Of a DNA stretch of 64,000 nucleotides, positions 21,956-64,000 are shown piece by piece. The stretch is from Macrostomum lignano. Taxonomy: Eukaryota. The stretch lies in the NCBI GenBank assembly GCA_002269645.1, contig NIVC01000761.1, forward strand, positions 95,152-159,151, in the 5' to 3' direction. Every line of letters starts with the position of its first letter. Positions within the stretch are counted from its first letter, which is position 1. The notes beneath the pieces were generated by a model. It saw only the letters and a list, made by a program, of their open reading frames with translations, had not been told where the DNA came from and searched no databases. Both the position numbers and the translations under genes were made by a program.

Positions 21956-24900
21956 TCACAGCTGGTTCGGCGAGGTCGGTCCGCCGCCGCTACCGCTGCC
22001 GCTGGGATGCTGCCGGCGCTGGTCCTCCTGCCGCACCCGCTGCTGGATAATCCGCTCAGCTTTGAGCACACTGGCCTGGGAGCCGCTAATCGTTACAACT
22101 CGATTGCGAGTGTGCGACTGATAATCGCCGCGCTTGGACACCTGAGCGAATGGGAAATGGGATTCAAGGGCTACTCGCGCTGTTCTCCCACGGCTCAGAG
22201 CTAGTGCGCGCCATCTTGGCTTGGAGTTGACGTGAACAGGAACTCGAGAACCTAACATCTCACCCCCTAGATCTCCAGTCTACTAGATCTTAGAATCTAG
22301 TCTCTTCTGAGTTTAGAAATACAGAATTGCACCCACTGGATCTCAGAATCTTACCCATTAGATTCCAGAATCTCACCCTCTACATCTCAGAATCTCACCC
22401 ACTTGATGCCAGAATCTCACCCACTAGATTCCAGAATCTCACCCACTAGATTCCAGACCCTCACCTACTAGATTCCAGAATCTCACCCTCTACATCTCAG
22501 AATCTCACCCACTTGATGCCAGAATCTCACCCATTTGATTCCAGAATCTCACCCACTTGATGCCAGAATCTCACCCATTTGATTCCAGAATCTCACCCAC
22601 TTTATTCCAGAATCTCACCCACTAGATTCCAGAATCTCACCCATTTGATTCCAGAATCTCACCCACTTGATGCCAGAATCTCACCCATTTGATTCCAGAA
22701 TCTCACCCACTAGATTCCAGAATCTCACCCATTAGATTCCAGAATCTCACCCACTTGATGCCAGAATCTCACCCATTTGATTCCAGAATCTCACCCACTT
22801 GATGCCAGAATCTCAACCATTTTATTCCAGAATCTCACCCACTTTATTCCAGAATCTCACCCACTAGATTCCAGAATCTCACCTACTAGATTTCAGAATC
22901 TCACTCACTGGATTCCAGAATCTCACCCATTAGATTCGAGAATCTCACCCACTAGATTCCAGAATCTCACCCCTAGATTCCAGAATCTCACCTACTATAG
23001 ATTTCAGAATCTCACCCTCTACATCTCAGAATCTCACCCACTTGATGCCAGAATCTCACCCATTAGATTTCAGAATCTCAACCACTTGATTCCAGAATTA
23101 CACTCACTGGATTCCAGAATCTCACCCACTTGATGCCAGAATCTCAACCATTTTATTCCAGAATCTCACCCACTTTATTCCAGAATCTCACCCACTAGAT
23201 TCCAGAATCTCACCCACTAGATTCCAGAATCTCACCCACTAGATTCCAGAATCTCACCCACTAGATTCCAGAATCTCACCCACTAGATTCCAGAATCTCA
23301 CCCACTAGATTCCAGAATCTCACCCACTTTATTCCAGAATCTCACCCACTAGATTCCAGAATCTCACCTACTAGATTTCAGAATCTCACCCTCTACATCT
23401 CAGAATCTCACCCACTTGATGCCAGAATCTCACCCATTAGATTTCAGAATCTCAACCACTTGATTCCAGAATTTCACTCACTGGATTCCAGAATCTCACC
23501 CATTAGATTCGAAAATCTCGACCACTAGATTCCAGAATCTCACCCCTAGATTCCAGAATCTCACCCCTAGATTCCAGAATCTCACCCCTAGATTCCAGAA
23601 TCTCACCCCTAGATTCCAGAATCTCACCCCTAGATTCCAGAATCTCACCCACTAGATTCCAGAATCTCATCCACTTGATGCCAGAATCTTACCCACTAGA
23701 TTCCAGAATCTCACTCATTAGATTCGAGAATCTCACCTACTAGATTCCAGAATCTCACCTACTAGATTCCAGAATCTCACCCCTAGATTCCAGAATCTCA
23801 CCCCTAGATTCCAGAATCTCACCCACTAGATTCCAGAATCTAACCCACTTGATGCCAGAATCTCACCCACTTGATGCCAGAATCTCACCCACTATAATCC
23901 AGAATCTCATCCACTTGATGCCAGAATCTCACCCACTAGATTCCAGAATCTCACCCACTAGATTCCCGTATGTTGCAGCAGCCAACTCACTTGAATATTA
24001 GTCTGAGTGGTGCTCTGCAGCTCCGCGATATCCTTCCCACCGGGTCCGATGATAACCCGACTAGGGCTTCGGGAATCTCAAGGTCGCGCTTGCACTGGGC
24101 TGTCGAGTCCCACGCCTGGCCGCCGCCAGCAGCAGTCGAGGACACGACAGTAACGGGCGGCGGCAGCCCCGCATTGGCGGAATAAACGAAGGCGTCCCCG
24201 CCCGGCAGACCACCCGCGGCGCCGCCGCCAAACGGCGCTCCGACGCCGAAATCTGCGCCAGCGGCGGCCGCGGCGGCGGCGGCTGCTGCAGCGGCTGCGG
24301 AAGGATCGGCAGACAGCGGCATCAGAGCCGACAGCGAGCCGTGCGACAAGTTGAAGGACGAGTGAGGCGACTGCAACAGCGACATGGCGCCTCCGCCAGC
24401 GCCGCCGCCGCCCGGAGGTCCAGGAGAGATGATGGCCTGCGGAGGAGGCGGCGGCGGAGGTGCTGGCGGAGCAGCCTGAGGAGTCTGCGCTCCCAGTGAC
24501 TGCAGATTGAAGAAGCCATAACTAGCCAGCGTGAGCATAGCGCTAATAATATCCTCAGCCGCTGAGTCTGAATATCCACTCTGCCTCAGCGAGGCTCGCA
24601 GAGTGTCCAGCGAGATGGAACCGGCCGAACCGAACGAGCAGGCCGAGTTCTGAGACGAGTTCAGACTGAGCGGCGCCCCACCACCGCTGCCGCCTCCAAC
24701 GCCCAGCTGCAGGTCAAAGCCGCTGCCTCCGCTGGCTCCCTGTGGAGAGGAGGCCGCGCTGCCGAGGCCGCTGCCGCCCTGGACGAGCGCGTACGGACTG
24801 CCAGTGGGGTAGGCACTGGCCACCGGGCCTGTGATGTTCGAATAGCTGATGTTCGGACAGCTGGCCGACTGTGGGTCCTCGGCGATCTTGGCCAGGATCA

Positions 24901-26493
24901 TGGCGGCCGCGGCACGGTTCTGATCGGGATCGCCTGCCACAGTGACGCAGCGCTCCGACAGGGCCTGCTCCTTCGGCTTCTGCGAGATCTGCACGTAGGC
25001 ACCGCTGGAGTCCATGATCTCCTTGATGAATGCGCCCTTCTTCCCGATGATCATGCCAGCTGTGCTGTTGGGTACCAGGATCTTCAACTGCGGCGGGTTC
25101 GGGGGTGTTTAATGTACTTCTGAGGTGTGCATTGTACAATGTACTTCTGAGGTGTGCATTGTGCAATGTACTTCTGGGGTGTGCAATGTACTTCTGAGAT
25201 GCACAATGTACTTCTGAGATGCACAGTGTACTTCTGAGATGCACAGTGTACTTCTGAGATGCACAGTGTACTTCTGAGATGCACAGTGTACTTCTGAGGT
25301 GCACAGTGAAGAAAAGAACGACTGTGGGAATAATAATTAACGATAGAAAATCCATACATACGATTCAGCAAAGAGTGCGCATGTTTCTCAATCTCACCTG
25401 TCTATGCCGTTCTACATTGAGTTTGCCGTCCCCAGTCAGTTTGGGACTCGGGTCGGGCTTCTCCAATACCCGATCCATGATGTAGTGGCACACTCCCGTG
25501 ATGGCCTCTACAGCGCCCTGGATTAGGCAGATTCGCTCCGTGGTTCCTAAAAAAACAGGTGTGAGAATATATAGAATAGAAACTCCCAGATCCCATTGGA
25601 TTCAAATCCCAGATCCCATTGGATTCAAATCCCAGATTATATTGGATTCAAATCCCAGATCCCATTGGATTCAAATCCCAAATCCCATTGGATTCAAATC
25701 CCAGATCCCATTGGATTCAAATCCCAGATTCCATTGGATTCAAATTCCAGATTCCATTGGATTCAAATTCCAGATACCATTGGATTCAAATCCCAGATAC
25801 CATTGGATTCAAACCCCAGATACATTGAATTCAAATCCCAGATCCCATTGGATTCAAATCCCAGATCCCATTGGATTCAAATCCCAGATCTCATTGAATT
25901 CAAATCCCAGATCCCATTGGATTCAAATCCCAGATTACATTGGATTCAAATCCCAGATCCCATTGGATTCAAATCCCAGATCCCATTAGATTCAAATCCC
26001 AAATACCATTGGATTCAAATCCCAGATACCATTGGATTCAAATCCCAGATACCATTGGATTCAAACCCCAGATACATTGAATTCAAATCCCAGATCCCAT
26101 TGGATTCAAATCCCAGATCCCATTGGATTCAAATCCCAGATCCCATTGGATTCAAACCTCAGATCCCATTGAATTCAAATACCAGATCCCATTGGATTCA
26201 AATCCCAGATACCATTGGATTCAAATCCCAGATCCCATTGGATTCAAATCCCAGATACCATTGGATTCAAATCCCAGATTCCATTTTAAAGATTAACATA
26301 TTTATCAGAAAATGCTAAACAAAGAATACAAACAAATGCATGTTCTACTCACCTGGATAGCAATCATTAACCTTAGACATTTTAACCTTGGCCCCATAGT
26401 CTTTTTGCACCTGGGCCAGAGCTTCTCCACCCTTGCCAATGATAGCACCAGCAGCAATCGATGGTATTAGAACTTTGAGGTGCACATTGTCAT
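21956..26493 (-). CDS. nova: Nova/pasilla three-KH-domain splicing regulator
   Basis: Exons 26493-26353 ([18 protein letters not shown]...YPG), 25546-25398 ([10 protein letters not shown]), 25087-23991 ([18 protein letters not shown]...QISQKP; linker LTLASYG; start of KH3) and 22141-21956 ([20 protein letters not shown]), all GT-AG. One base is missing at 24056-24058; a probable extra 5' exon lies at 28298-28236. Confidence 0.92.
22320..23966. repeat. 22-bp minisatellite CCAGAATCTCACCCACTAGATT in last Nova intron
   Basis: Tandem copies. Confidence 0.95.
25105..25305. repeat. 20-bp minisatellite GTGTACTTCTGAGATGCACA in Nova intron
   Basis: Tandem copies. Confidence 0.92.
25585..26285. repeat. 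23-bp minisatellite GGATTCAAATCCCAGATCCCATT in Nova intron
   Basis: Tandem copies. Confidence 0.95.
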
Positions 26494-28298: not shown

Positions 28299-30047
28299 CT
28301 AATGAATATACTGCGCAAAAGCTAAGCTAATTTCTACTTTAAAAGTAACTAACAACTACAAAGCTATAGCTAGTGCTGTAAGTGTAAAGGTTTAGTCTAG
28401 CAATAGGCCCAAGAAATTCTTAATCAAAATAAAGAAGGTACTTCTTGATACTAATAACAATGCTAAAGCAGTAATTATGGCGTGCAGTAATGAGAGCAAT
28501 GAAGTGTCTATTACAAATGTTTTAGATGAAGTATGAAACGAAAACTCATAAGTACTGGCAATCTATTTCATTATAGTTAGGGAAAGAGCCGGATTTTAAG
28601 TTTAATCATCGAACGAATCATAAATTTTCATCAAAAGTAATTTGAGTTATTGAAAAGAAAAATCAGGGAAATAAAGCCATTGTTTTAAAAAAAAACTTAT
28701 CTTAAGAAAATGTTTTTTCCATGTTAATTTTGTACAACTTTCTAAAGAAACGACTGAGAAAACAATAAATGTGTTTTCTTTTGTTTAGTGCTTTACAAAA
28801 GCAAGCCGCTAGCGAAATTGATGCTCGCAGTTTTATTTGTATTACTTAAAAATACTTAAGCCGTCCTTGCGTAGAATGATTATTTTAAGTTTTGCTTAGT
28901 TTACTCGTAAGTCGTAACAGTAGCTGTTTTGCGGCAACACTTTTGAATTCCATTTTGGCATTACGATCATCTTGTCTACGAGGTTTGACCTGAAACCATT
29001 TATTCCTACCGTGGTCCCGGTTGAATCTAAATGAAGAATAATTTTAATGAGCTGATAATAATAAAATCTAATTTTGTTGGTGGGCGCCCCTTATTTTGGT
29101 GGCGCTTCTGTCTCTTAGGTTTTGTTCCAGTCAATTGAGACTTGAGAGTTTTGGAGGAGTGAATTTTGTGGTCGGCGATCGATTTACCCGCTCCCCGGGC
29201 CTGCCTTCGCCACACTGGACTTTGGGCCATTATACATGCACATATAGCATCAAGCTAAACTTCATCAATCATCAGATACATTATATGTATGTTACATGTT
29301 ACATGTTACAACAGGGTGTCACAACATCATTTATGCATGCCAAATCAGTTGATTCAAATCCAATGCAGCATTTTCTAACGATACATATTCATACCATGTA
29401 GTGTATTTCGCATATTGGTTCATATTGGTGAACACGGAATTTCTATATGCATTAATTCCCCCCCCCCACGTTTGCAATACATGTACACATGTTTTCTGAC
29501 ACACTCTTGACTCTTCACATCAATTCTCTCTGCATGGAAGCATACTTGTACGCGACTCCATTTCTCCTCTCCTAGCCCATATGCAGTAATGGGAGAATTC
29601 AGGCAGCAAACAATTAGAAATCCTAATATTAAAAGCATTATGCATGATGCTGCAGGTATCTGCTACTCCTCATGCTTAACCATCGATCATCAACCCCTGT
29701 CCATCCGGAGCCAATGGCTGATGGCTTTTCAACTCTGCGCGCATTGCGCTATTGTATATTCCCCTCTCTCCCTGCGGTAGCAATGTTCCTGACAGACACT
29801 CCTCTAACCTCCCCACCACAGCGCGTCTGCAGTCAACCATTTTTTTCTATATTTATGCAGCAACTTGCAGGAACTTCTCTATTTTTAAAGCTTCTTTCAG
29901 GCTTGCCTGAAGCGCGCTCTGTTTCAAAGCGCGTCTTCTGTGTTGTAGATTCCTGCTGTACTAGGCTGAAAATTCACCCAGATTAAGCTTTAGATTTAGA
30001 AGCAACCAGCCGTATAGCAAAAACCCTTGGTACCAGACCCGTACCCG

Positions 30048-31240
30048 TAGCATCTCAGACCCGTAGCATCTCAGACCCGTAGCATCTCAGACCCGTAGCA
30101 TCTCAGACCCGTAGCATCTCAGACCCGTAGCATCTCAGACCCGTAGCATCTCAGACCCGTAGCATCTCAGACCCGTAGCATCTCAGACCCGTAGCATCTC
30201 AGACCCGTAGCATCTCAGACCCGTAGCATCTCAGACCCGTAGCATCTCAGACCCGTAGCATCTCAGACCCGTAGCATCTCAGACCCGTAGCATCTCAGAC
30301 CCGTAGCATCTCAGACCCGTAGCATCTCAGACCCGTAGCATCTCAGACCCGTAGCATCTCAGACCCGTAGCATCTCAGACCCGTAGCATCTCAGACCCGT
30401 AGCATCTCAGACCCGTAGCATCTCAGACCCGTAGCATCTCAGACCCGTAGCATCTCAGACCCGTAGCATCTCAGACCCGTAGCATCTCAGACCCGTAGCA
30501 TCTCAGACCCGTAGCATCTCAGACCCGTAGCATCTCAGACCCGTAGCATCTCAGACCCGTAGCATCTCAGACCTGTAGCATCTCAGACCCGTAGCATCTC
30601 AGACCCGCCCGTAGCATCTCAGACCCGTAGCATCTCAGACCCGTAGCATCTCAGATCTGTAGCATCTCAGACCCGTAGCATCTCAGACCCGTAGCATCTC
30701 AGACCCGTAGCATCTCAGACCCGTAGCATCTCAGACCCACCCGTAGCATCTCAGACCCACCCGTAGCATCTCAGACCCGTAGCATCTCAGACCCGTAGCA
30801 TCTCAGACCCGTAGCATCTCAGACCCGTAGCATCTCAGACCCGTAGCATCTCAGACCCGTAGCATCTCAGACCCACCCGTAGCATCTCAGACCCGTAGCA
30901 TCTCAGACCCGTAGCATCTCAGACCCGTAGCATCTCAGACCCGTAGCATCTCAGACCCACCCGTAGCATCTCAGACCCGTAGCATCTCAGACCCGTAGCA
31001 TCTCAGACCCGTAGCATCTCAGACCCGTAGCATCTCAGACCCGTAGCATCTCAGACCCGTAGCATCTCAGACCCGTAGCATCTCAGACCCGTAGCATCTC
31101 AGACCCGTAGCATCTCAGACCCGTAGCATCTCAGACCCGTAGCATCTCAGACCCGTAGCATCTCAGACCCGTAGCATCTCAGACCCGTAGCATCTCAGAC
31201 CCGTAGCATCTCAGACCCGTAGCATCAGACACGTAGCATC
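30048..31240. repeat. 16-bp minisatellite CCCGTAGCATCTCAGA
   Basis: About 70 nearly perfect copies. Confidence 0.98.
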
Positions 31241-31327
31241 TTCTTACCAGCAAGCAAATCCAGCATCCGAATCTACACTAGCAAGCATTTCCTGGTCTTC
31301 AGAAGCAGAAGCAGAAGCGAAGCAGAA

Positions 31328-41758
<10,431 letters not shown>

Positions 41759-42326: not shown

Positions 42327-43169
42327 ATGCTCACCGGCTCCATCATTCCCCTGCTGCTGCCGCTGCTGCTACTCTGCCGACCTGCGACCTGCTGCACGCG
42401 GCCCGCCTCCTTCCACTCGATCCTCGCCTCCAACTGCGTGTCGCCAGCCCACTACCAGCGGCTCGACCTGGACATCGCCAGCTGCGCCTTTCGCTGTCGG
42501 GCAGCTCCGCGGTGCCGGGCCTTCGCCATGGAGGCCGGACACGCCTCGGGCGCTCAGGTCTGCCTGCTGTTCTCCTTTGATGCCTGCAGCTCGCAGCTGC
42601 TGCTCGATGCCAGCTCGATGGCGAGCAGCGGCTGCGCCAGCCGGCAGCTCCGAGTCTTCGTCAAGCAGTCGGAGGGTCTCGAGCCGGGCCGGCTCTGTCC
42701 CGCCGAATATCGCTGGGTGTCCGGCGTCAGCGGCAGCAGCTTCAAGGGCTCGCTGTACAAGACTGCTGGGAGCGGGCAGGAGGCCAGCTGGAGTGCTCAG
42801 GCCGACAGCTGCCGGAGCTTCTTGAGCAGCTCGGACGGGTCCGCCATGCCGCTGACGAAGCTGACCGATCTCAGCAGCGTCGATGAGCTGCAGGACGTGA
42901 GGGCGTCGGCTGGACTTTCCAGCCAGGAAATCTGGGTTGGCGCATCGATTCTGAGCAACGGCAGCTGGGCGTGGGCGGACTGCGGCTGGCCGCTGCCGCT
43001 GCTGAGCGCTGCATATGGCGGAGTCTGGGGGTCCAGCGCTCCTAACGATTCACCGAAACTCAACTTACGTGCCAGAATTAGCCATTCTGGTATAGACGAC
43101 AAGCCGGATTCAACTGACTATTTTGGCGCCTGCGAATGCCTGGATCCGTTCTGGGGATTTGAAGTTTGA
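42327..43169 (+). CDS. Secreted PAN/Apple + C-type-lectin-like protein, copy 1 (intact, single exon, 280 aa)
   Basis: Signal peptide; PAN pattern CAFRCRAAPRCRAF...CLLF; CTLD features SWSAQADSC, EIWVGA, GSWAWAD, VWGSSAPND, GACE. Confidence 0.8.
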   Translation: MLTGSIIPLLLPLLLLCRPATCCTRPASFHSILASNCVSPAHYQRLDLDIASCAFRCRAAPRCRAFAMEAGHASGAQVCLLFSFDACSSQLLLDASSMASSGCASRQLRVFVKQSEGLEPGRLCPAEYRWVSGVSGSSFKGSLYKTAGSGQEASWSAQADSCRSFLSSSDGSAMPLTKLTDLSSVDELQDVRASAGLSSQEIWVGASILSNGSWAWADCGWPLPLLSAAYGGVWGSSAPNDSPKLNLRARISHSGIDDKPDSTDYFGACECLDPFWGFEV

Positions 43170-45805: not shown

Positions 45806-47970
45806 CTGGTTGTAAAACTGAACCACACCTGTCAAGGCTCAACAAAAATTATCGCCTCCTTTGTGTGGAGCTATAAAAATGCAGGCCTACTCAGATTCAA
45901 CGGCATTTGGTGCGGCTAAGGTGCAATGTGAATTCTAGTCAAAAAGCGCTGCTTAAAATCGTACAAGAACAAGTGCTACTTCTGACTGACAGCTGCATCA
46001 CAGCTCTGCACAAATCAAGTACTGCCGCAAGCTGAATCAGGTGATTGAAGCGGCCAAAAAGGTCCTGTTGTGTTCCGAGACGGACCAGCCGGCATGTTCC
46101 GCGCGCGGTACGAGCAGGGAGAGTCAGCACTAACGCGCAGGCAGTAGAACCGCAACCAGGATTGCATCGAAGGCACAGGCCCTGGCGACAATGCCCTAAG
46201 TGAACCCGAAAGAACAGAGGCAGGCCGGACGAGCGGTGCTGACGCAAAAACAAATTGTACAGGCCTGAGGTGGGGCTAAAACTGCAGGGTAAGAGAAACG
46301 GCGGGGTGGGGCAGAGAGAGAGAATTGGCTGCATTCACGCTTAATACAACTGGGTAGAAAAACTAGGGGGGCAGGCGACAAGGAGCCAGCCAATGGGAAG
46401 GCACGGCGAGCAAAGAATTACATGTACAATAATCGGGGGAAGGGGGAGAGAAAATCGCAGACAGCGGCTGCGTAAATATACTAAAACCAATCAACAATCA
46501 ATAAATCAAATAGGCCCAGTGCAAATGCAACAAAATCCAGTAAATTACATTATGCTATACGAGTATGATGGAGGAGGTGGGGAGGGTCACACAGAAACAG
46601 GCGAAGAAAAAGCAAGCAGCCAATCACAGCGGGGGAAGATAAAACACAACAATAGGGCGGCTAAAGTACACTGCGGGCCAATACATTGGATCACAACAGA
46701 TCAGGTGAGATAAGTTTTATAGTCTCAGAAAATTATAGACGCAAATTAGCAGTCTGCGCTCCTCATTGGGAAGACCACAAAGAAAGGAATCACAGTGTTT
46801 AAATAAGTATACCCAACAACAGTCAAAAGTTCCACCCGCCAAGCAAAGATGTTTTTATCCACCTTCCACCGTAAATTTTAAATGAGAAGTTTTCTCTCTA
46901 AATACGCGTGATTTTCCTTCAATAGCACTTGACATGCGACACTCACCTCCTACAATACTCGTACATGATTTCTGCTTTTTGAGGATCTTAAAATGGGGAA
47001 ATAAAACATCATTAAAATGCAAGCGATAGCCTATAAGCCTGACCCGAAAAGTTGGCGATTTTTTTCATATAAATTTCAATGCTGACTCGCGTGTATTTTT
47101 GGAGATGCCTGTCAGAGGAACAACACGTCAACTTTAGTATATAGCAATAAAGAACAGAGAGAAGAGAAGAGAAAGAGAGACGAAGAGATGGAGAGAAGGA
47201 AATTGCTAGCTATGCCTGATGGCATGCGAAGACTAAAGCTCACTCAGAGAAGTAAGACAGTAAGTAGAAGAACCTGAGTCGACCAGCTTCTAGCATGCTG
47301 AGCATAGCCAATGACAGATGCTTGAAGAACACACCCGGAAGGAATATTTGATAAAATCCACTCAAAATGCAACAAAATGAAAAGATAGACAGCAGCAACG
47401 TTTTCCTCTGCACTCAAAACTCAACGAAGTGCCTCCACTGTCGAAGAATATGAAATCCTGTAACTTCGTTCTCCTGCTGCTGCCGCTGCTGCTGCTCCGC
47501 CGACCTGCGACCTGCTGCACGCGGCCCGCCTCCTTCCACTCGATCCTCGCCTCCAACTGCGTGTCGCCAGCCCACTACCAGCGGCTCGACCTGGACATCG
47601 CCAACTGCGCCTTTCGCTGTCGGGCAGCTCCGCGGTGCCGGGCCTTCGCCATGGAGGCCGGACACGCCTCGGACGCTCAGGTCTGCCTGCTGTTCTCCTT
47701 CGATGCCTGCAGCTCGCAGCTGCTGCTCGATGCCAGCTCGATGGCGAGCAGCGGCTGCGCCAGTCGGCAGCTCCGAGTCTTCGTCAAGCAGTCGGAGGGT
47801 CTCGAGCCGGGCCGGCTCTGTCCCGCCGACTATCGCTGGGTGTCCGGCGTCAGCGGCAGCAGCTTCAAGGGTTCGCTGTACAAGGCTGCTGGGAGCGGGC
47901 AGGAGGCCAGCTGGAGTGCTCAGGCCGACAGCTGCCGGAGCTTCTTGAGCAGCTCAGACGGGTCCGCCAT

Positions 47971-53172: not shown

Positions 53173-53805
53173 ATGGTCCCGATTCCCCTGCTGCTGCCGC
53201 TGCTGCTGCTCCGCCGACCTGCGACCTGCTGCATTCGGCCAACCTCCTTCCACTCGATCCTCGCCTCCAACTGCGTGTCGCCAGCCCACTACCAGCGGCT
53301 CGACCTGGACATCGCCAACTGCGCCTTTCGCTGTCGCGCAGCTCCGCGGTGCCGGGCCTTCACCATGGAGGCCGGACACGCCTTGGACGCTCAGGTCTGC
53401 CTGCTGTTCTCCTTCGATGCCTGCAGCTCGCAGCTGCTGCTCGATCCCAGCTCGATGGCGAGCAGCGGCTGTTCCAGCCGGCAGCTCCGAGTCTTCGTCA
53501 AGCAGTCGGAGGGTCTCGAGCCGGGCCGGCTCTGTCCCGCCGACTATCGCTGGGTGTCCGGCGTCAGCGGCAGCAGCTTCAAGGGCTCGCTGTACAAGGC
53601 TGCTGGGAGCGGGCAGGAGGCCAGCTGGAGTGCTCAGGCCGACAGCTGCCGGAGCTTCTTGAGCAGCTCGGACGGGACCGCCATGCGGGCATCAGCTGGC
53701 CTGGCTGGAAGCGCTGGGCTGGCACCGCTGCTCTGGGCAATGGCAGCTGGGCCTGAGCGCCGAGCACTGGAGGTGGTTGAGTCTGGAAAGCAGATGATTC
53801 AATAG
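53173..53805 (+). pseudogene. PAN/Apple gene, copy 3, with a deleted and frameshifted lectin domain
   Basis: Near-identical signal and PAN region; after DGTAM the CTLD is internally deleted and the GNGSWA remnant is out of frame and ends in TGA. Could still encode a PAN-only protein. Confidence 0.7.
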
Positions 53806-54234
53806 ATGGATTCAATGCGGACAACCAGTCCAGGTTTTACAAGTCCGAGCTGAGAGATTCTCCGAGCTCCAGTCTCCATTTTGAACCTGCGAGTGCGTTG
53901 ATCCGCTTTGGCACTTCATTGCTGCCTTCATTGCTGTCGTTTTTGCGAGAACCGAGCGTAAGTGCCTCGGTCTGAACCAATCGGTGTCTGTTATACTGGT
54001 TATTAATAACAGAAAGTTTTCGTTCTTTCGAAGAAAAGCTTCCAGGATGGAGTGTAAAAATACTAAAAAGCTGAGAACTACATTGTTATACTCAAGTATT
54101 CAGATTCGGCATGGCCGAGTTTCTGAGATAACTAAAATTCCAGAAAATACGAAGTCCGGTAAGACGAAGTCGTGAATCGATTTGTGCCAGCATTTTTCCA
54201 TCCCACACAGTTACTCCCCTACCCTGAAGACACC

Positions 54235-54830
54235 CACCCACTCTCTGTTATTTCCTAACCCAAGGACACCCACCCCACTCCCTGTTACTCCCTACCCCAA
54301 GGACACTCCACCCCACTCCCTGTTACTCCCTACCCCAAGGACACTCCACCCCACTCCCTGTTACTCCCTACCCCAAGGACACTCCACCCCACTCCCTGTT
54401 ACTCCCTACCCCAAGGACACTCCACCCCACTCCCTGTTATTTCCTACCCGAAAAACACCCACCCCACTCCCTGTTATTTCCTACCCGAAAAACACCCACC
54501 CCACTCCCTGTTATTTCCTACCCGAAAAACACCCACCCCACTCCCTGTTATTTCCTACCCGAAAAACACCCACCCCACTCCCTGTTATTTCCTACCCGAA
54601 AAACACCCACCCCACTCCCTGTTATTTCCTACCCGAAAGACACCCACCCACTCCCTGTTATTTCCTACCCGAAAAACACCCACCCCACTCCCTGTTATTT
54701 CCTACCCGAAAAACACCCACCCCACTCCCTGTTATTTCCTACCCGAAAAACACCCAACCCACTCCCTGTTATTCCCTCACCCCATTCCACTCATTGTTAT
54801 TTTCCTACCCTAAAGACACCCACCCCACTT
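54235..54830. repeat. ~37-bp minisatellite CCCACTCCCTGTTATTTCCTACCCGAAAAACACCCAC
   Basis: Tandem copies. Confidence 0.92.
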
Positions 54831-55679: not shown

Positions 55680-55950
55680 CACCCCACCGACACCCACATC
55701 ACGCCACTGACTTTCCTATCCCTCCGACACCCACCTCACACCATTGACTTTCCTACCCCTTCGACACCCACCTCACGCCATTGACTTTCCTACCCCTTCG
55801 ACACCCACCTCACGCCATTGACTTTCCTACCCCTTCGACACTCAGCTCACGCCATTGACTTTCCTACCCCTTCGGCACCCACCTCACGCCATTGACTTTC
55901 CTACCCCTCCGAGATCGACCTCTCGGCACTGATTTTCCTATCCCTCCAAT
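55680..55950. repeat. 37-bp minisatellite CCACCTCACGCCATTGACTTTCCTACCCCTTCGACAC
   Basis: Tandem copies. Confidence 0.9.
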
Positions 55951-56181: not shown

Positions 56182-59100
56182 CTAAAGCTCTCCCTGAGAC
56201 CGCGGGCTGCTCATAAGGCTGTTGAGACCCGCGCGAGCTTCTTCCAGGTTAGCACGAGTCTGCCGCAGCATGTCCAAGTCGGCCGATGCACTGCAAACCG
56301 GGATTTTTGAAGGGGACACAGGCTCTTTGGTAATGAGCTCGTAATTAATCTAGTTTATAACGACAATAGTTTAAGCATTCTCACCTGCTAGCTGGCTCCA
56401 CACCTCTTGATCTGTCGCTTGTAACCTGCAGCTGCCTGTAACGCTGCCTGTGCTGACGGAGATTCTCGTCCACTGTCTGCACCAGATGGAATTCAAGATC
56501 ACATAGCATTACTTATCAATTTTTTCTGAAAAAGCTTTTTAATTCCTTGTCCTTCACCCACCACGCCCTGTGATTTTCTACCCCAACTGCACCCACCCCC
56601 ATTACCTCATACTCTGTGACTTTCTACCCTAACTGCACCCACCCCATCACCCCATTCCCTATGATTTTCTACCCCTACTGCACCCACCCCATCACCCCAT
56701 ACCCTATGATTTTCTACCCCAACTGCACCCACCCCATCACCCCATACCCTATGATTTTCTACCCCAACTGAACCCACCCCCTCACCCCATACCCTGTGAT
56801 TTTCTACCCCAACTGAACCCACCCCCCTCACCCCATACCCTGTAATTTACTACCCCAACTGAACCCACCCCCCCTCACCCCATACCCTGTAAGTTACTAC
56901 CCCAACTGCACCCACCCCAACTTTCTACCCCTACAGCATCCACCTCACTATGAAAAGGTATAGAAGTAAACTCTAAACTATAATAGTGACGATGTAGGGC
57001 AAAAAATATACGTATTTAGATAACATGCAACTACGATAGTTAAAAAATCCAAGCAAATGAAAAACAGTGACGTAAAACAGTTCTTACACAGAACGGCAAA
57101 TCGGTAAATTGCGACTACTTCAACTAGTTAATATGTTACTAACTCACTACTGGTTAGTAAAGTCAAGGAATTGTACAGTACAGTAGATACGATGACGTTA
57201 AAGCTATTGGCAAACTGTATGAATAGCACAAATCACAGCGGCATCAACAGGACATCTGATTTCTTTTGATCACAACTTTTAGGTTAGTAAAAGCTCCAGA
57301 GAAGTTCATCTATCAGGCGGAGACTTACACTCGGCAGCTCTGCTGCACTTCTGTTGGCCGTCACGAGAGCCGCCGCGACAATCTTACGAGATTAAAAATC
57401 AAATTTTAAGCAATTAAACATAGTAGCAAAATGCCAAGCATTTGTTTTAACGTGTCCAACTAGATAATTTAGCGTACTCAAAGCCGAAGCATGACCAAGC
57501 AATTATTCAAATGCAGGCTAGTATCAGGACGTAAATGTCACCTTTTTTAGATTTATATGAAGGCCTAATTCTGGCTAGAATGAACTACAAGTAGCCACAC
57601 AAATTTTCAGAAATACAGCACTCATAAGTAGGTCATTGATACTACTATTTAAGCTTTTATAACAATAGTAGTGTGAACTGACATTTATTCTACTAGATTC
57701 ATAGGATTGAAACTCCCTGTAAATTGAATTCGCGGTTAAAAGACAAACTTTTATCACCAGTCACCATATTTCTTTTCACTCTGAGGAGCTGGCATAAAAG
57801 AAGCAATTAGATCAATGCGTGTACACCTATTGTGTCTTGTTGCCTCAAAGCAAGCCATTTAGATGCAGCTGCGTACAAGCTGAGTAGTGATATTTAAAGT
57901 AGCTGAATAACACAGTGAGAATAGCAGAGGCAGTTCAAGGAAAGTGGCCCACCTGAGATATCCGAGCCGATCTGTTGATCGCATCCAGCGCCGACCCCGT
58001 GCGGATGGCAGGGCGGCCCGATCGGTCTAGGAAGGACGCGGTGGCGGTCACAGTTCGACGCGGCGGGCGCGTTCGGTAAATTGGCAGCGGCGGCGGTGGC
58101 GGCGGCGGTGCTGCTTGAGAAGCAGCGGCCTGCTCGGCTAGACTAGTCGACGAAGTCGACTCTTGAGACCGACGATGATAATCACCGCCAGCTGCAGTGC
58201 CAGCCTGAGCATTCCCAGACTCTGCCGTTGGTGCTTTCGGTACTGTTGTCGCCGTCGTTGTCGCTGAAGCCGCCGCTGACGAATGCTCTGAAGGCTCGAC
58301 TGTCTGTTCAGCAACAATCGGCCGCAGCAGTTTGCTCCTCTCCGCTGTGAGTTTGCGCGCGTAGTTTGTGGCGCCGGAAGCCGGCTCGGCTGCGGGAGAG
58401 CGCGTTCCAGCCAGCTGACATTGCGACAGTAGGCGCGTCGCCTCCAACTGAGAGTTGGCAAACTGTCTCTCTCTCTTGAACATCTCCATCTGGGTGCGCC
58501 ACTCTTGATTTCGGATTTCCATGCGCAGTTGGTTGATGCGCGGATTCGGCTGGGTCAGTGGCTCCGCCGGTCTTCCACGGGCTGGAGTTTGCTGAACGGT
58601 TGTGCGAACTGAAGCCGCCACTTCCACCGTGCGCTGTTGTTCCGGCTCAGGCTCAGGCGATGGAGCTCGTGTCGGCTCTGGAGAGCTGTCTACAGTCTCA
58701 AGCAGCAGGTCTGTCTGGCCTCGAATATAGTTCAACTGCGCTTCAATCATCTCTTCCAAGTGCGACATCGGTTCAGGTCTAGCATAATGAAATCACAAAC
58801 ACCACGACTTGATCGTGGAGTTCCTGTCTCGGCATCTGTAGACACTGAAATCTCCCGGGTTCTACGGGGCTGCCTCTGCGTCTCAGAAGAAGCAGCCTCG
58901 GCAGGCCTGCCGACAACCAGAGCGTCAATTTGCTCAACCGATCGAGAACGCACAAGTTGAGACTCCGAGCAACCAAGCGAGGGCGGCAGGCGACCAATAT
59001 CGCGCGACGACTGCGATTGGCGATTGTTGGCACTCTGGTCTAACAAGCCCGGCGAAGCAGTTGCTGGCGTCTCTTGTGAACTGCCGAGACTGTCGGAAAT

Positions 59101-62100
59101 AGCTAACGCAGGAACCAGGAGACTGGTCTCAGTTACACGGTCTGGCATCGAGGCAAACGACATACGACGATCGTCCTCAACGGGAATATTTTGAAGAGAC
59201 AGAGACAGCCGGCCCGAATCCTCCCATTGATCACTTTCATCGCGGACTTCCAGCTTCTCTGTCTGGGTAGCACATTCAATAACAGTCTTTACCTTTGCAC
59301 TGTCTTGAGAAGGTATAGTGGGCGAAAAACCGGGAGAGCTCCTAGCCACAGGCATTGCCGTAGCAATACTAGACGGCTGTTCAGTAGCTTCTAAGAGACT
59401 ATCGGAAACTCGACATTCAGAGTCTAACACTGCATTCAAAACGCCAGCTGATGTTTTTTGTCCAGGCATAGACGATATCACCTCTGAGGTCTGGGTGCTA
59501 CCAAAGAATGGAACAATGTCTAATTCATTGACATCAGAAAAAGCGATTTCAACCTCATCTGGGAGTCCTTTCATCTTATCTAGTGGTCGTTCTAAGAGTT
59601 GATGCACCTCAACGTCATCTAAGGATTCTTTCATATTATCGGTCAATTTCTCTAGGGCAAGGGCGTCCTTGTCGAGGCCAGCCTTCTCAGCGGCACTCTT
59701 GTCGAGCGGTCCCTCCGAGGCTTGACGCAAAGCGTCGCTCAGCGCGTTCTGCTCCTCGGGAGTGAGATCGGCCGTTTTGCCGCTCTCCTTGGCGTCATGC
59801 GTCTTTTGCATTGCCTTGGCTAGAGCGCCGTCGTCAGCAGATGGCTCGCCGTCGCTTGGCTGGCCAATAGCCTCCAAAATGTCTTTGGCCGTGTCGGCGT
59901 CCACCTGTCCGCCTGACCTTTCCAGCTCGGTTAGAGCCTGTCGGCTTTCATCGGCTTTTTGCACTTTGTCGCGTCCCTCCTCGACCATCTTGGCCACCTT
60001 GCCGAGCGCTTCAAGCTGCTCCGGACTGACCGTGTCGCCAGCCTTCTTGTTCTCGAGAGCGTTCAGCACAGTGAGCGCGTTGCGCGCCTCAGCGTCGGAT
60101 AGGCCAATACTCTCCGGGTCCTCTTCGAGAACCTTCCTCATCGCGCTGGCGCTCTCGGTTAGACTATCAGCCTGGTCGTCGTTCAGCTTCTTGTCCTTGC
60201 CGTCGCTGGCTAGCCATGAGAGTGCCTTCAGCGTATCGGCCGCATTCTCGGCGTCCTCAACTGCGGCGGCCTTCTCTGCGTCGCGCAGAGACTCGGCCGA
60301 CTCGCCCTCCTTTCGCTTCTTGTCGGCCTTCTTCTTCTTTTTGTTCAGCAGCTAGCGCTTTGGCCAGCTGAGCGCGTCCTCGTCGGTCAGCTCGTCCAAC
60401 GGACGATCCTTGATGCGCTGCAGCGTCGCTGCTAGCATTTCTCGCTCCTCGTCACTTAGGCCGCTTGCGTCGGACCCAAGCACCTCATCGAGTGCGTTCA
60501 CTGCGTCGCCGACCGCTTTGCGCTCTTCCTCAGTCAGGTCGCCAGCCTTGACGCCGCGTCGCTTCAGCACGTCTTCGGCAAGCTTCAGTGCGCCAAGGGC
60601 GTCCTTGTCGAGGCCAGCCTTCTCAGCGGCACTCTTGTCGAGCGGTCCCTCCGAGGCTTGACGCAAAGCGTCGCTCAGCGCGTTCTGCTCCTCGGGAGTG
60701 AGATCGGCCGTTTTGCCGCTCTCCTTGGCGTCATGCGTCTTTTGCATTGCCTTGGCTAGAGCGCCGTCGTCAGCAGATGGCTCGCCGTCGCTTGGCTGGC
60801 CAATAGCCTCCAAAATGTCTTTGGCCGTGTCGGCGTCCACCTGTCCGCCTGACCTTTCCAGCTCGGTTAGAGCCTGTCGGCTTCATCGGCTTTTTGCACT
60901 TTGTCGCGTCCCTCCTCGACCATCTTGGCCACCTTGCCGAGCGCTTCAAGCTGCTCCGGACTGACCGTGTCGCCAGCCTTCTTGTTCTCGAGAGCGTTCA
61001 GCACAGTGAGCGCGTTGCGCGCCTCAGCGTCGGATAGGCCAATACTCTCCGGGTCCTCTTCGAGAACCTTCCTCATCGCGCTGGCGCTCTCGGTTAGACT
61101 ATCAGCCTGGTCGTCGTTCAGCTTCTTGTCCTTGCCGTCGCTGGCTAGCCATGAGAGTGCCTTCAGCGTATCGGCCGCATTCTCGGCGTCCTCAACTGCG
61201 GCGGCCTTCTCTGCGTCGCGCAGAGACTCGGCCGACTCGCCCTCCTTTCGCTTCTTGTCGGCCTTCTTCTTCTTTTTGTTCAGCATAGCTAGCGCTTTGG
61301 CCAGCTGAGCGCGGTCCTCGTCGGTCAGCTCGTCCAACGGACGATCCTTGATACGCTGCAGCGTCGCTGCTAGCATTTCTCGCTCCTCGTCACTTAGGCC
61401 GCTTGCGTCGGACCCAAGCACCTCATCGAGTGCGTTCACTGCGTCGCCGACCGCTTTGCGCTCTTCCTCAGTCAGGTCGCCAGCCTTGACGCCGCGTCGC
61501 TTCAGCACGTCTTCGGCAAGCTTCAGTGCGCCAAGGGCGTCCTTGTCGAGGCCAGCCTTCTCAGCGGCACTCTTGTCGAGCGGTCCCTCCGAGGCTTGAC
61601 GCAAAGCGTCGCTCAGCGCGTTCTGCTCCTCGGAGTGAGATCGGCCGTTTTGCCGCTCTCCTTGGCGTCATGCGTCTTTTGCATTGCCTTGGCTAGAGCG
61701 CCGTCGTCAGCAGATGGCTCGCCGTCGCTTGGCTGGCCAATAGCCTCCAAAATGTCTTGGCCGTGTCGGCGTCCACCTGTCCGCCTGACCTTTCCAGCTC
61801 GGTTAGAGCCTGTCGGCTTTCATCGGCTTTTTGCACTTTGTCGCGTCCCTCCTCGACCATCTTGGCCACCTTGCCGAGCGCTTCAAGCTGCTCCGGACTG
61901 ACCGTGTCGCCAGCCTTCTTGTTCTCGAGAGCGTTCAGCACAGTGAGCGCGTTGCGCGCCTCAGCGTCGGATAGGCCAATACTCTCCGGGTCCTCTTCGA
62001 GAACCTTCCTCATCGCGCTGGCGCTCTCGGTTAGACTATCAGCCTGGTCGTCGTTCAGCTTCTTGTCCTTGCCGTCGCTGGCTAGCCATGAGAGTGCCTT

Positions 62101-64000
62101 CAGCGTATCGGCCGCATTCTCGGCGTCCTCAACTGCGGCGGCCTTCTCTGCGTCGCGCAGAGACTCGGCCGACTCGCCCTCCTTTCGCTTCTTGTCGGCC
62201 TTCTTCTTCTTTTTGTTCAGCATAGCTAGCGCTTTGGCCAGCTGAGCGCGGTCCTCGTCGGTCAGCTCGTCCAACGGACGATCCTTGATGCGCTGCAGCG
62301 TCGCTGCTAGCATTTCTCGCTCCTCGTCACTTAGGCCGCTTGCGTCGGACCCAAGCACCTCATCGAGTGCGTTCACTGCGTCGCCGACCGCTTTGCGCTC
62401 TTCCTCAGTCAGGTCGCCAGCCTTGACGCCGCGTCGCTTCAGCACGTCTTCGGCAAGCTTCAGTGCGCCAAGGGCGTCCTTGTCGAGGCCAGCCTTCTCA
62501 GCGGCACTCTTGTCGAGCGGTCCCTCCGAGGCTTGACGCAAAGCGTCGCTCAGCGCGTTCTGCTCCTCGGGAGTGAGATCGGCCGTTTTGCCGCTCTCCT
62601 TGGCGTCATGCGTCTTTTGCATTGCCTTGGCTAGAGCGCCGTCGTCAGCAGATGGCTCGCCGTCGCTTGGCTGGCCAATAGCCTCCAAAATGTCTTTGGC
62701 CGTGTCGGCGTCCACCTGTCCGCCTGACCTTTCCAGCTCGGTTAGAGCCTGTCGGCTTTCATCGGCTTTTTGCACTTTGTCGCGTCCCTCCTCGACCATC
62801 TTGGCCACCTTGCCGAGCGCTTCAAGCTGCTCCGGACTGACCGTGTCGCCAGCCTTCTTGTTCTCGAGAGCGTTCAGCACAGTGAGCGCGTTGCGCGCCT
62901 CAGCGTCGGATAGGCCAATACTCTCCGGGTCCTCTTCGAGAACCTTCCTCATCGCGCTGGCGCTCTCGGTTAGACTATCAGCCTGGTCGTCGTTCAGCTT
63001 CTTGTCCTTGCCGTCGCTGGCTAGCCATGAGAGTGCCTTCAGCGTATCGGCCGCATTCTCGGCGTCCTCAACTGCGGCGGCCTTCTCTGCGTCGCGCAGA
63101 GACTCGGCCGACTCGCCCTCCTTTCGCTTCTTGTCGGCCTTCTTCTTCTTTTTGTTCAGCATAGCTAGCGCTTTGGCCAGCTGAGCGCGGTCCTCGTCGG
63201 TCAGCTCGTCCAACGGACGATCCTTGATACGCTGCAGCGTCGCTGCTAGCATTTCTCGCTCCTCGTCACTTAGGCCGCTTGCGTCGGACCCAAGCACCTC
63301 ATCGAGTGCGTTCACTGCGTCGCCGACCGCTTTGCGCTCTTCCTCAGTCAGGTCGCCAGCCTTGACGCCGCGTCGCTTCAGCACGTCTTCGGCAAGCTTC
63401 AGTGCGCCAAGGGCGTCCTTGTCGAGGCCAGCCTTCTCAGCGGCACTCTTGTCGAGCGGTCCCTCCGAGGCTTGACGCAAAGCGTCGCTCAGCGCGTTCT
63501 GCTCCTCGGGAGTGAGATCGGCCTTTTGCCGCTCTCCTTGGCGTCATGCGTCTTTTGCATTGCCTTGGCTAGAGCGCCGTCGTCAGCAGATGGCTCGCCG
63601 TCGCTTGGCTGGCCAATAGCCTCCAAAATGTCTTTGGCCGTGTCGGCGTCCACCTGTCCGCCTGACCTTTCCAGCTCGGTTAGAGCCTGTCGGCTTTCAT
63701 CGGCTTTTTGCACTTTGTCGCGTCCCTCCTCGACCATCTTGGCCACCTTGCCGAGCGCTTCAAGCTGCTCCGGACTGACCGTGTCGCCAGCCTTCTTGTT
63801 CTCGAGAGCGTTCAGCACAGTGAGCGCGTTGCGCGCCTCAGCGTCGGATAGGCCAAGACTCTCCGGGTCCTCTTCGAGAACCTTCCTCATCGCGCTGGCG
63901 CTCTCGGTTAGACTATCAGCCTGGTCGTCGTTCAGCTTCTTGTCCTTGCCGTCGCTGGCTAGCCATGAGAGTGCCTTCAGCGTATCGGCCGCATTCTCGG
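56182..64000 (-). CDS. 3' part of a giant protein: tandem 313-aa helical repeats, Ser/Pro-rich disordered region, short coiled-coil C-terminus
   Basis: Large exon >64000-57953 (ends RISQ|GTGGGC), then exons 57382-57329, 56476-56385 and 56290-56182 (phases 0, 0, 2; ends LEEARAGLNSLMSSPRSQGEL*). Several 1-2 nt indels break the frame, and a frame switch near 58770 is unresolved. Confidence 0.75.
56560..56935. repeat. ~45-bp C-rich minisatellite in an intron of the giant-repeat gene
   Basis: Tandem copies of CCCAACTGCACCCACCCCATCACCCCATACCCTATGATTTTCTAC. Confidence 0.9.
59658..64000 (-). repeat. Coding tandem repeat, 939-bp unit, 4 full copies plus a partial one
   Basis: The same CAAGGGCGTCC anchor at 59658, 60594, 61532, 62469 and 63408 (spacings 936, 938, 937, 939). 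Confidence 0.95.

What the first reader, a model, noticed from the sequence alone, without database searches (positions are those of the whole stretch)
59658..64000. Giant protein built from near-identical 313-aa all-helical repeats
Seen: at least 4.6 copies of a 939-bp unit lie in one exon and differ almost only by 1-2 nt indels and rare substitutions. The unit is A/E/D/K/L-rich and Cys-free, with recurring helix-cap starts (LTPEEQ, LTEEER, LSDEER, VSPEQL, LSDAEA) and one basic run NKKKKKADKKRK. Inference: a recently expanded or homogenised array of helical bundles forming an elongated intracellular structural protein. I recognise no family for it, and the fold style recalls bacterial helical surface repeats.
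Basis: partly seen in the sequence, partly recalled or inferred. Interest (0 to 1): 0.7.

Follow-up and report, generated by a model that had tools for sequence, protein, structure and literature searches.

The report
Orphan flatworm giant helical-repeat protein gene
The window ends in the 3' part of a real but uncharacterised Macrostomum lignano gene whose huge exon is a string of almost identical 313-amino-acid all-helical modules with no known sequence or fold relatives; it is a genuine curiosity, but its function cannot be read from the sequence.

Summary
On the minus strand, 59658-64000 holds 4.6 head-to-tail copies of a 939-bp unit. The copies differ only by six small deletions and two substitution sites. 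The array runs in frame into a unique C-terminal region and three small 3' exons, with the stop at 56184-56182.

The window is 95-99% identical over about 20 kb to a Macrostomum lignano Mlig_3_7 contig. That contig carries a sister array of at least 7 units of 924 bp. Twelve substitutions and a 15-bp indel are fixed between the two arrays, while each array is nearly uniform inside, which is concerted evolution. The frameshifts look like long-read consensus errors.

Among 1.84 billion representative proteins only two relatives exist. One is the M. lignano paralogue or allele. The other is a 46%-identical collapsed repeat of 305 aa on a 1-kb contig from a brackish-mat metagenome. That contig is labelled bacterial, probably through mis-binning.

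Pfam, NCBIfam, PDB sequences, 185,579 prokaryotic species genomes and Foldseek (PDB, BFVD) give no significant match. AlphaFold predicts 12-13 helices per unit (pLDDT 81).

Homogenisation, helicity and the lack of a family are supported. Intracellular location is untested, and the bacterial resemblance is not supported. The function remains inferred: a modular structural or scaffold protein.

The parts
59658..64000 (-). Tandem array of 4.63 units of 939 bp (313 aa each), cut off by the window end. In the register of the ORF the units start at 63477, 62538, 61601, 60663 and 59727. Six singleton deletions break the frame at about 63523, 61758/9, 61633/4, 60883/4, 60376/7 and 60350/1.
61693..63480 (-). 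Longest intact stretch of the array: a 595-aa ORF (1.9 units). It was the query for all searches and the first AlphaFold model.
57953..59657 (-). Unique C-terminal part of the same large exon. It is Ser/Thr/Pro-rich, contains a Gln/Arg/Glu-rich putative coiled-coil stretch and a PPPPPPPLP run, and ends at the donor CAG|GT (57953|57952). It is 99.4% nt-identical to L001.
58756..58757 (-). GG where the sister locus has GGG. This 1-nt deletion splits the C-terminal reading frame into ORFs 58747-60141 and 57935-58768.
   Evidence: P0001 reads RTWEEMIEAQ across the site
57329..57382 (-). 54-nt exon (IVAAALVTANRSAAELPS), with an AG acceptor and a GTAAGT donor.
56385..56476 (-). 92-nt exon (TVDENLRQHRQRYRQLQVTSDRSRGVEPASS).
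56182..56290 (-). Terminal exon (ASADLDMLRQTRANLEEARAGLNSLMSSPRSQGEL) with the TAG stop at 56184-56182.

Best explanation
This is the 3' portion (at least 7.8 kb, four exons visible, minus strand) of a genuine, lineage-restricted protein-coding gene of the flatworm Macrostomum lignano.

Shown:
- A very large exon carries a head-to-tail array of nearly identical 939-bp units.
- Each unit encodes a 313-aa acidic module with no Cys and almost no aromatic residues (one Trp, no Phe or Tyr).
- The array is kept uniform by concerted evolution, that is unequal crossing-over or gene conversion within the array. The evidence is that the sister locus carries its own fixed unit variant.
- The coding sequence is conserved much better than the introns.
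- A distant relative keeps the same unit length and order.

Inferred:
- The frameshifting deletions are long-read consensus errors in a stretch that short reads cannot polish. The native product would therefore be one long ORF.
- The product is large, and its full size and N-terminus are unknown.
- Each unit folds into 12-13 alpha-helices, probably two helical bundles, separated by a Lys-rich linker. This would give a beads-on-a-string rod.
- The unique tail (disordered Ser/Thr/Pro region, two short coiled-coil-like segments, a polyproline run) would serve to dimerise or anchor the rod.
- The protein acts as a modular structural spacer or scaffold. Whether it works inside the cell or is secreted cannot be decided.
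For: Repeat anatomy.

Organism and sister locus:
- The only close relative, P0001, lies on NIVC01000762.1 of GCA_002269645.1. That assembly is M. lignano Mlig_3_7 (PMC5730564).
- Window and L001 are collinear at 95.2-99.4% nt identity.

Concerted evolution:
- 12 substitutions plus a 15-bp indel are fixed between arrays, against 1-2 variable sites within each array.

Purifying selection:
- Nucleotide divergence is 0.6% in the unique exon and 1.3% in the unit consensus, against 3-5% in introns and downstream DNA.
- dN/dS is 0.43, and all amino-acid changes are conservative.

Cross-species conservation:
- L002 is 46% identical and collinear over the whole unit. Only the sense frame is open, and it is itself a collapsed 915-bp tandem unit.
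- Hydrophobic positions are conserved more than polar ones, 56% against 31%.

Error signature of the indels:
- All are deletions and all are singletons. At least four of the six array deletions lie in homopolymers, as does the one at 58756-58757 (GG for GGG).
- L001 shows the same kind of defect: 3 of 6 units lack one G of a GG.
- Mlig_3_7 is a PacBio/Canu assembly.

Expression (indirect):
- The P0001 model joins three 3' introns exactly. The Mlig_3_7 annotation paper describes an RNA-seq-guided transcriptome.

Fold:
- AlphaFold2 gives an all-helical unit with mean pLDDT 80.8 and pTM 0.55. The two-unit model has pLDDT 73 and pTM 0.36, which fits flexibly linked modules.
Against: - No direct read-level or RNA evidence could be examined here.
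- 3 of the 4 full units in the window and 3 of 6 in L001 are frameshifted as assembled, so a decaying gene copy is not formally excluded.
- The AlphaFold alignment had only 3-4 rows. The tertiary packing is therefore weakly founded and no coordinates could be inspected.
- Nothing in the data speaks directly to function or cellular location. The N-terminus, and with it any signal peptide, is missing from both loci.
- The unit has almost no aromatic residues and 39% charged residues. It might be only marginally folded in isolation.
Confidence: 0.6

Rival explanations
1. The protein is a secreted extracellular material, such as a component of an adhesive or releasing gland, rhabdites, egg shell, cement gland or seminal fluid. 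It would then be a polyanionic helical polymer rather than an intracellular scaffold.
For: M. lignano already has a secreted giant with long near-identical repeats: Mlig-ap2, with 21 x 255 aa and 25 x 221 aa. Long homogenised repeats are typical of secreted materials such as silks and mucins (established knowledge). The gene is lineage-restricted and its unit diverges somewhat faster than the unique exon. The unit is strongly acidic at pI 4.6.
Against: No Cys-rich or other extracellular domains are present in the 680-aa tail. The tail has a polyproline run and coiled-coil-like stretches, which are more usual in cytoplasmic proteins (inference). The released detachment factor is postulated to be a small molecule (PMC6410801). 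No signal peptide can be assessed.
Confidence: 0.25
2. This is a decaying pseudogene copy or a coding-derived satellite. The frameshifts would be real, and this locus would make no full-length protein.
For: Seven frame-breaking deletions occur in about 6 kb of coding DNA in the window. The DV1 genome carries much recent duplication, so a redundant copy could decay.
Against: Every lesion is a singleton deletion, at least five of the seven in homopolymers, which is the signature of long-read error. There are no stop-creating substitutions. Exons are 3-8 times less diverged from the sister locus than introns. The sister locus keeps a 1241-aa open frame across two units and the tail.
Confidence: 0.1
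3. The array is an assembly artefact. One or a few units would have been multiplied by the assembler, or the true array would be much larger and collapsed.
For: Both arrays end at a sequence boundary, the window end and position 1 of contig NIVC01000762.1. So the copy number is unknown.
Against: Tandem arrangement is seen independently at two loci with different unit variants. It is also implied in the metagenomic relative, whose 1032-bp contig overlaps itself by 117 nt at an offset of 915 nt. Unit-to-unit junctions are in frame and identical.
Confidence: 0.1
4. The repeat is of bacterial origin, through contamination or horizontal transfer. The basis is that its only distant relative is deposited as a Kangiellaceae MAG protein.
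For: P0002 carries the NCBI label 'MAG: hypothetical protein, partial [Kangiellaceae bacterium]'.
Against: - The window gene has spliceosomal introns and lies in flatworm DNA.
- No relative exists in one genome for each of 185,579 prokaryotic species, and there is no NCBIfam hit.
- The MAG contig is a 1-kb collapsed repeat, the kind of fragment that binning misplaces. Only 1 of its 53 Ala codons is GCG.
- The sample is a brackish coastal microbial mat (PMC8605020), a plausible habitat for meiofaunal flatworms.
Confidence: 0.03

Closest known systems
Mlig-ap2, the surface-binding adhesive protein of Macrostomum lignano (Wunderer et al. 2019, PMC6410801)
   Same: Same organism. It is a giant protein whose centre is dozens of near-identical units several hundred amino acids long, and it is hard to assemble for the same reason.
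   Different: Its units are 255 and 221 aa, not 313 or 308. It has vWD/TIL/C8/LDL domains at the N-terminus and TIL/TSP-1 domains at the C-terminus. The 680-aa tail here has no Pfam domain at all. The sequences were not compared directly.
Aciniform and tubuliform spider silk proteins (about 200-aa iterated helical-bundle repeat domains)
   Same: Long units that are almost identical at the nucleotide level and kept uniform by concerted evolution. Each unit is a small all-helical bundle, giving beads-on-a-string architecture. They are also very poor in Cys.
   Different: There is no sequence or significant fold similarity (Foldseek E 4-5). Spidroin units are Ser/Ala/Gly-rich and poorly charged, whereas this unit is 39% charged and acidic. 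No spidroin terminal domains are present.
Spectrin, plakin, vinculin, talin and alpha-catenin type helical-bundle rods
   Same: Predicted strings of 3-5-helix bundles forming an elongated cytoskeletal linker. The best, though non-significant, Foldseek neighbours are vinculin, HMP-1 and talin.
   Different: E >= 0.06 and TM about 0.2-0.25. There are no Pfam spectrin, vinculin or talin hits. Repeats in those families are diverged from one another, not near-identical.
Amphipathic-helix proteins with no Cys and few aromatic residues (exchangeable apolipoproteins, group-3 LEA proteins)
   Same: Ala/Glu/Lys/Asp/Leu-rich composition, helices often starting at Pro or capping boxes, no Cys.
   Different: There are no Pfam hits to these families. 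No 11- or 22-mer periodicity was detected by the self-comparison, where the only signal was a weak relation between two parts of the unit about 100 aa long (z = 3.9). This resemblance is recalled from memory and was not tested further.

Membership tests
Mlig-ap2-like flatworm adhesive proteins | Central repeats of 255 aa and 221 aa | tested here: not met
   The unit is 313 aa in the window and 308 aa in L001. The published repeat lengths come from PMC6410801 and PMC8621496.
Mlig-ap2-like flatworm adhesive proteins | C-terminal TIL and thrombospondin type-1 domains (Cys-rich) | tested here: not met
   A Pfam scan of the window C-terminal ORFs and of P0001 finds no TIL, TSP-1 or vWD domain.
Mlig-ap2-like flatworm adhesive proteins | Expression in adhesive gland cells, and a non-adhesive RNAi phenotype | not testable with these tools
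   No expression data are accessible by sequence.
Spectrin, vinculin or talin helical-bundle repeat families | Significant sequence-profile or fold match to the family | tested here: not met
   No Pfam hit. The best Foldseek PDB match is vinculin at E 0.063 and TM 0.20 for the two-unit model, and E 0.97 for the single unit.
Spidroin repetitive domains (aciniform type) | Fold match to solved repeat domains, and spidroin N/C-terminal domains | tested here: not met
   Foldseek E 5.2 (9lif) and 4.1 (9lie). No Pfam spidroin domains in the tail. The N-terminus is unavailable.
   NCBIfam gives 0 families. The genome-contig scans with the alignment and with P0002 found nothing. The Pfam aRib and Int_EF-hand hits are far below cut-off.
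EF-hand helix-loop-helix pairs | 12-residue loop with Asp/Asn/Ser ligands at positions 1, 3 and 5, Gly at 6 and Glu at 12 | tested here: not met
   By reading the sequence, the loops keep only the hydrophobic-8 / Ser-Thr-Asn-Asp-9 / acidic-11-12 part, which is a generic N-cap box. Positions 1, 3 and 5 are Lys, Gly or Ala. No Pfam EF-hand hit and no EF-hand protein among the Foldseek hits. AlphaFold does draw short beta-bridges between successive loops, so a degenerate relationship cannot be excluded.
Pfam DUF5053 (PF16476) | Score at or above the gathering cut-off (26.6 bits) from a real domain match | tested here: inconclusive
   The window ORF scores 19.7 bits, below the cut-off. P0001 reaches 32.6 bits only by summing three copies of one roughly 32-residue partial match, and no single stretch passes. 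I treat it as not meaningful.

The most novel reading that the evidence does not exclude
The 313-aa unit is a previously undescribed helical fold family confined to macrostomid flatworms. The protein it builds would be a megadalton polyanionic polymer secreted as a biomaterial, for example a component of the duo-gland adhesion-release system or of rhabdites. In that role the regularly spaced acidic bundles and Lys-rich linkers would drive reversible electrostatic assembly. The unit length (305-313 aa) and order are conserved at 46% identity, and both lineages keep their arrays uniform. That would then reflect selection on a material property.
Probability: 0.1. Interest if true: 0.65.

Novelty: new variant of a known kind. 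Interest (0 to 1): 0.4.

Why it matters
If the reading is right, M. lignano makes a very large protein from a module that matches no described family or solved fold. M. lignano is a tractable model with transgenesis, RNAi and in situ methods.

The module is preserved in length and order in at least one other organism, and each array is homogenised independently. That makes it a clean natural case for studying concerted evolution of long coding repeats. It is also a candidate new structural or biomaterial protein.

Practically, the locus shows how PacBio-era assemblies fragment and frameshift such genes. The public model P0001 starts at an internal Met of a repeat and holds about 2.1 units. The protein is therefore under-represented in proteomes and orthology tables.

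On present evidence it is an interesting orphan, not a finding that opens a long-standing question.

Tried and rejected
- TRF missed the array because its longest period is 500. The repeat finder recovered it.
- The search for homologous proteins found nothing beyond P0001 itself. I tried the 595-aa ORF, the P0001 tail at residues 645-1320 and the P0001 repeat part at 1-640. The word pre-filter is swamped by low-complexity candidates and the length window excludes giants. As a result the N-terminus could not be recovered.
- The four related-loci scans found no relative. These were metagenome contigs twice and genome contigs twice, with alignment A1 and with P0002.
- Pfam, NCBIfam, PDB sequences and a PDB profile search gave only sub-threshold noise: HBS1_N, DUF6511, DUF5053, HTH_3, MatB.
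- Foldseek against PDB (two models) and BFVD gave nothing with E <= 0.001.
- For internal sub-repeats within the unit, the self-alignment z is about 3.5. Only one pair of thirds was marginal at z = 3.9, reached by 1 of 300 shuffles. That is too weak to claim.
- The EF-hand idea was rejected on loop ligands.
- A literature search for peptide strings returned 0 papers.
- The identification as Mlig-ap2 was rejected on repeat length and domains.
- The DUF3432 ('EGR') hit, which I first took as a metazoan marker, lies on a 24-bp minisatellite and is an artefact.
- Antisense ORFs of 160-200 aa on the plus strand of the array are a by-product of composition. In L002 only the sense frame is open.
Full report
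**1.

The repeat finder reports five in-register copies between 59639 and 63995, with start-to-start spacings of 935, 937, 939 and 938 nt. TRF missed them only because its longest period is 500. The coding strand is the minus strand.

Alignment of the units shows they are identical apart from a few differences:
- Six deletions, five of 1 nt and one of 2 nt. All are singletons, and at least four lie in CC, AAA or CCC runs.
- A synonymous CGT/CGC site.
- One Ile/Leu site in the partial unit at the window end.

An intact unit is 939 nt, or 313 aa. The stretch 59658-64000 holds 4.63 units and is cut by the window end.

The longest open stretch, 61693-63480(-), has 595 aa. The unit has no Cys, Phe or Tyr, one Trp, 72 acidic against 49 basic residues, and pI 4.6.

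**2. Gene structure**

The array runs in frame into unique sequence. tblastn with the tail of the relative P0001, together with reading the DNA, gives these pieces:
- the large exon, ending at 57953 with donor GT at 57952-57951;
- a 54-nt exon at 57382-57329;
- a 92-nt exon at 56476-56385;
- a terminal exon at 56290-56182, with TAG at 56184-56182.

All introns are GT-AG. One more 1-nt deletion (GG for GGG at 58756-58757) splits the tail into two ORFs. P0001 reads straight through that site.

**3. Whose gene it is**

A full HMMER pass over 1.84 billion representative proteins found only two relatives.

P0001 (1320 aa, 96% identical) lies on contig NIVC01000762.1 of GCA_002269645.1. Papers identify that assembly as Macrostomum lignano Mlig_3_7. 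It is a PacBio/Canu assembly of the DV1 line, and it carries 180 Mb of duplicated blocks that are at least 95% identical. An RNA-seq-guided transcriptome was built on it.

The window is collinear with that contig over about 20 kb:
- 99.4% identity in the unique exon;
- 95-97% in introns and downstream DNA.

So the window is M. lignano DNA. The two loci are duplicates, homeologues or haplotypes of one gene.

**4. Concerted evolution**

The sister array has at least 7 units of 924 bp (308 aa) and runs off the start of its contig. Between the arrays, 12 substitutions and a 15-bp indel (EKAAA) are fixed in all 4 full window units against all 6 L001 units. Each array is almost invariant inside.

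The partial unit nearest the window end carries the L001 state at one of these sites. Homogenisation is therefore not perfectly complete.

This is the expected footprint of unequal crossing-over or gene conversion within each array. Independent re-expansion from one unit in each locus would leave the same pattern.

**5. It is a gene under constraint, not a satellite**

- Divergence from the sister locus is 0.6% in the unique exon and 1.3% in the unit consensus. In introns and downstream DNA it is 3-5%.
- dN/dS between unit consensuses is 0.43. The seven amino-acid changes are conservative: D/E, M/L, K/Q, I/L and T/K.
- The second relative, P0002 (343 aa, 46% identical), is collinear with the whole unit and wraps around into the next one.
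- The 1032-bp contig of P0002 overlaps itself by 117 nt at an offset of 915 nt. It is therefore a collapsed tandem unit of 305 aa.
- Only the sense frame of that contig is open.
- Hydrophobic positions are conserved more than polar ones, 56% against 31%. The blocks TLKxLSWLASDGxDKxL and LExKKxGDxVxPEQLxALG stand out.

**6. The frameshifts**

All seven lesions in the window are deletions, all are singletons, and at least five lie in homopolymers. L001 shows the same kind of defect, with 3 of 6 units lacking one G of a GG.

Long near-identical repeats cannot be polished with short reads. I therefore read these lesions as consensus errors, which is an inference. I could not examine reads, and I searched only intact ORF pieces.

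**7. The 'bacterial' relative**

P0002 is deposited as a partial protein of a Kangiellaceae MAG. It comes from IMG co-assembly 3300040801. That sample is brackish coastal microbial mats of the Etang de Berre, France.

Several points argue against a bacterial origin:
- No relative turned up in one genome for each of 185,579 prokaryotic species.
- There is no NCBIfam hit.
- The contig is a 1-kb collapsed repeat with almost no GCG codons.

Mis-binning of a fragment from a meiofaunal flatworm is the simplest reading, and it is an inference.

**8. What the module looks like**

AlphaFold2 of the 595-aa ORF gives an all-helical chain with mean pLDDT 73 and pTM 0.36. Low-confidence breaks fall at the Lys-rich run and at two Gly/Pro/Ser loops.

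A single unit in the register from one Lys-run to the next gives 12-13 helices, mean pLDDT 80.8 and pTM 0.55. The alignments had only 3-4 rows, so the helices are credible but the packing is less so.

Searches for relatives of the module gave nothing significant:
- Foldseek against PDB gave nothing with E <= 0.001. Vinculin was best at E 0.06 and TM 0.2.
- Foldseek against BFVD likewise gave nothing.
- PDB sequence and profile searches found no significant match; the only hit was MatB at E 0.43.
- Pfam hits are sub-threshold noise. DUF5053 passes for P0001 only by adding three weak partial matches.

The recurring 'L-S/T-x-E-E' helix starts are capping boxes. The loops lack EF-hand ligands. Evidence for internal duplication inside the unit is marginal.

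**9. How it probably works**

Shown: a very long reading frame made of identical acidic helical modules with basic linkers, followed by a unique tail with no known domain.

Inferred: the product is an elongated beads-on-a-string protein, and its length is set by copy number. The tail contains a disordered Ser/Thr/Pro-rich region, two short Gln/Arg/Glu/Leu-rich stretches that look like coiled coils, and a PPPPPPPLP run. It would dimerise or anchor the rod.

I rate 'real homogenised repeat gene with error-induced frameshifts' at about 0.85. I rate 'structural or scaffold rod' at about 0.35. I cannot choose between an intracellular and a secreted location, because the N-terminus is missing from both loci. 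Three protein searches failed to recover it.

**10. Comparison with known systems**

The nearest analogue in the same animal is the adhesive protein Mlig-ap2, with 21 x 255 aa and 25 x 221 aa repeats. This gene differs from it in unit length and lacks its TIL/TSP-1 ends. So it is a different gene.

In architecture it resembles aciniform spidroins (long, near-identical helical-bundle units) and spectrin- or vinculin-type rods. No membership test is met for any of these.

The sequence already sits in public databases as an unnamed hypothetical protein. The object is therefore not unseen, but it is undescribed.

**11. Verdict**

- Novelty is a new family within the known kind 'giant proteins built from homogenised long tandem repeats'.
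- Interest is moderate at 0.4, because function is open and orphans of this sort are not rare in repeat-rich genomes.

Noticed in passing
window 1-57000, e.g. 13946-15702, 22322-23966, 30043-31241, 36495-38292: The window is saturated with minisatellites: 53 TRF rows with score >= 200 and periods of 4-118 bp. One is a 15-bp CT-rich array of 118 copies, which explains the extreme GC/AT skew at 12-16 kb. This fits the reported 15% simple and tandem repeat content of the M. lignano genome.
   Followed up: partly
window 36340-38325 (-): A 661-aa ORF hits Pfam DUF3432 (an EGR-associated family) at E 1.7e-12. The ORF lies almost entirely on a 24-bp minisatellite (36495-38292, 75 copies), so the hit is a low-complexity artefact, not an EGR gene.
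   Followed up: yes
window 23987-25087 (-): An ORF or exon with a clear KH_1 RNA-binding domain (E 5.5e-17). It is probably a real neighbouring gene and was not analysed further.
   Followed up: no
window 42345-42849, 47469-47970, 53183-53686; L001 12314-12818, 15249-15752, 18263-18767: An element of about 500 bp occurs three times at spacings of about 5-6 kb in the window and three times at about 3 kb in the sister contig. The window also has about 6 kb extra between 51152 and 44787 relative to L001. This is a structural difference between the two copies of the region.
   Followed up: no
window array units starting at 63477, 62538, 61601, 60663; partial unit 64000-63478: The only within-array synonymous polymorphism (CGT/CGC) alternates T, C, T, C in successive units. 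That hints at a two-unit higher-order repeat or mixed haplotypes. The partial unit at the window end carries the sister-locus state (Leu in ESLG), so units further upstream may be less homogenised.
   Followed up: partly
L002 (IMG 3300040801, Ga0450804_0071181; NCBI MEE4247509.1): A 1032-bp self-overlapping contig from a brackish microbial-mat co-assembly is deposited as a Kangiellaceae MAG protein. It encodes a 46%-identical homologue of this flatworm repeat and is probably eukaryotic DNA mis-binned into a bacterial MAG.
   Followed up: partly
L001 4669-10055 (protein P0001): The public gene model starts at an internal Met (MQKTHDAKES...) of a repeat unit, immediately after an assembly frameshift. 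It therefore holds only about 2.1 of the at least 7 units on the contig. The annotated protein is a truncated version of the real one.
   Followed up: yes
window 56566-56918, 55681-55947, 54218-54782: A 45-bp minisatellite sits inside the intron between the 54-nt and 92-nt exons. Two 37-bp minisatellite arrays (with different consensus units) lie downstream of the stop. Repeats at corresponding positions in the sister contig have different copy numbers, and the second has a 48-bp period.
   Followed up: no
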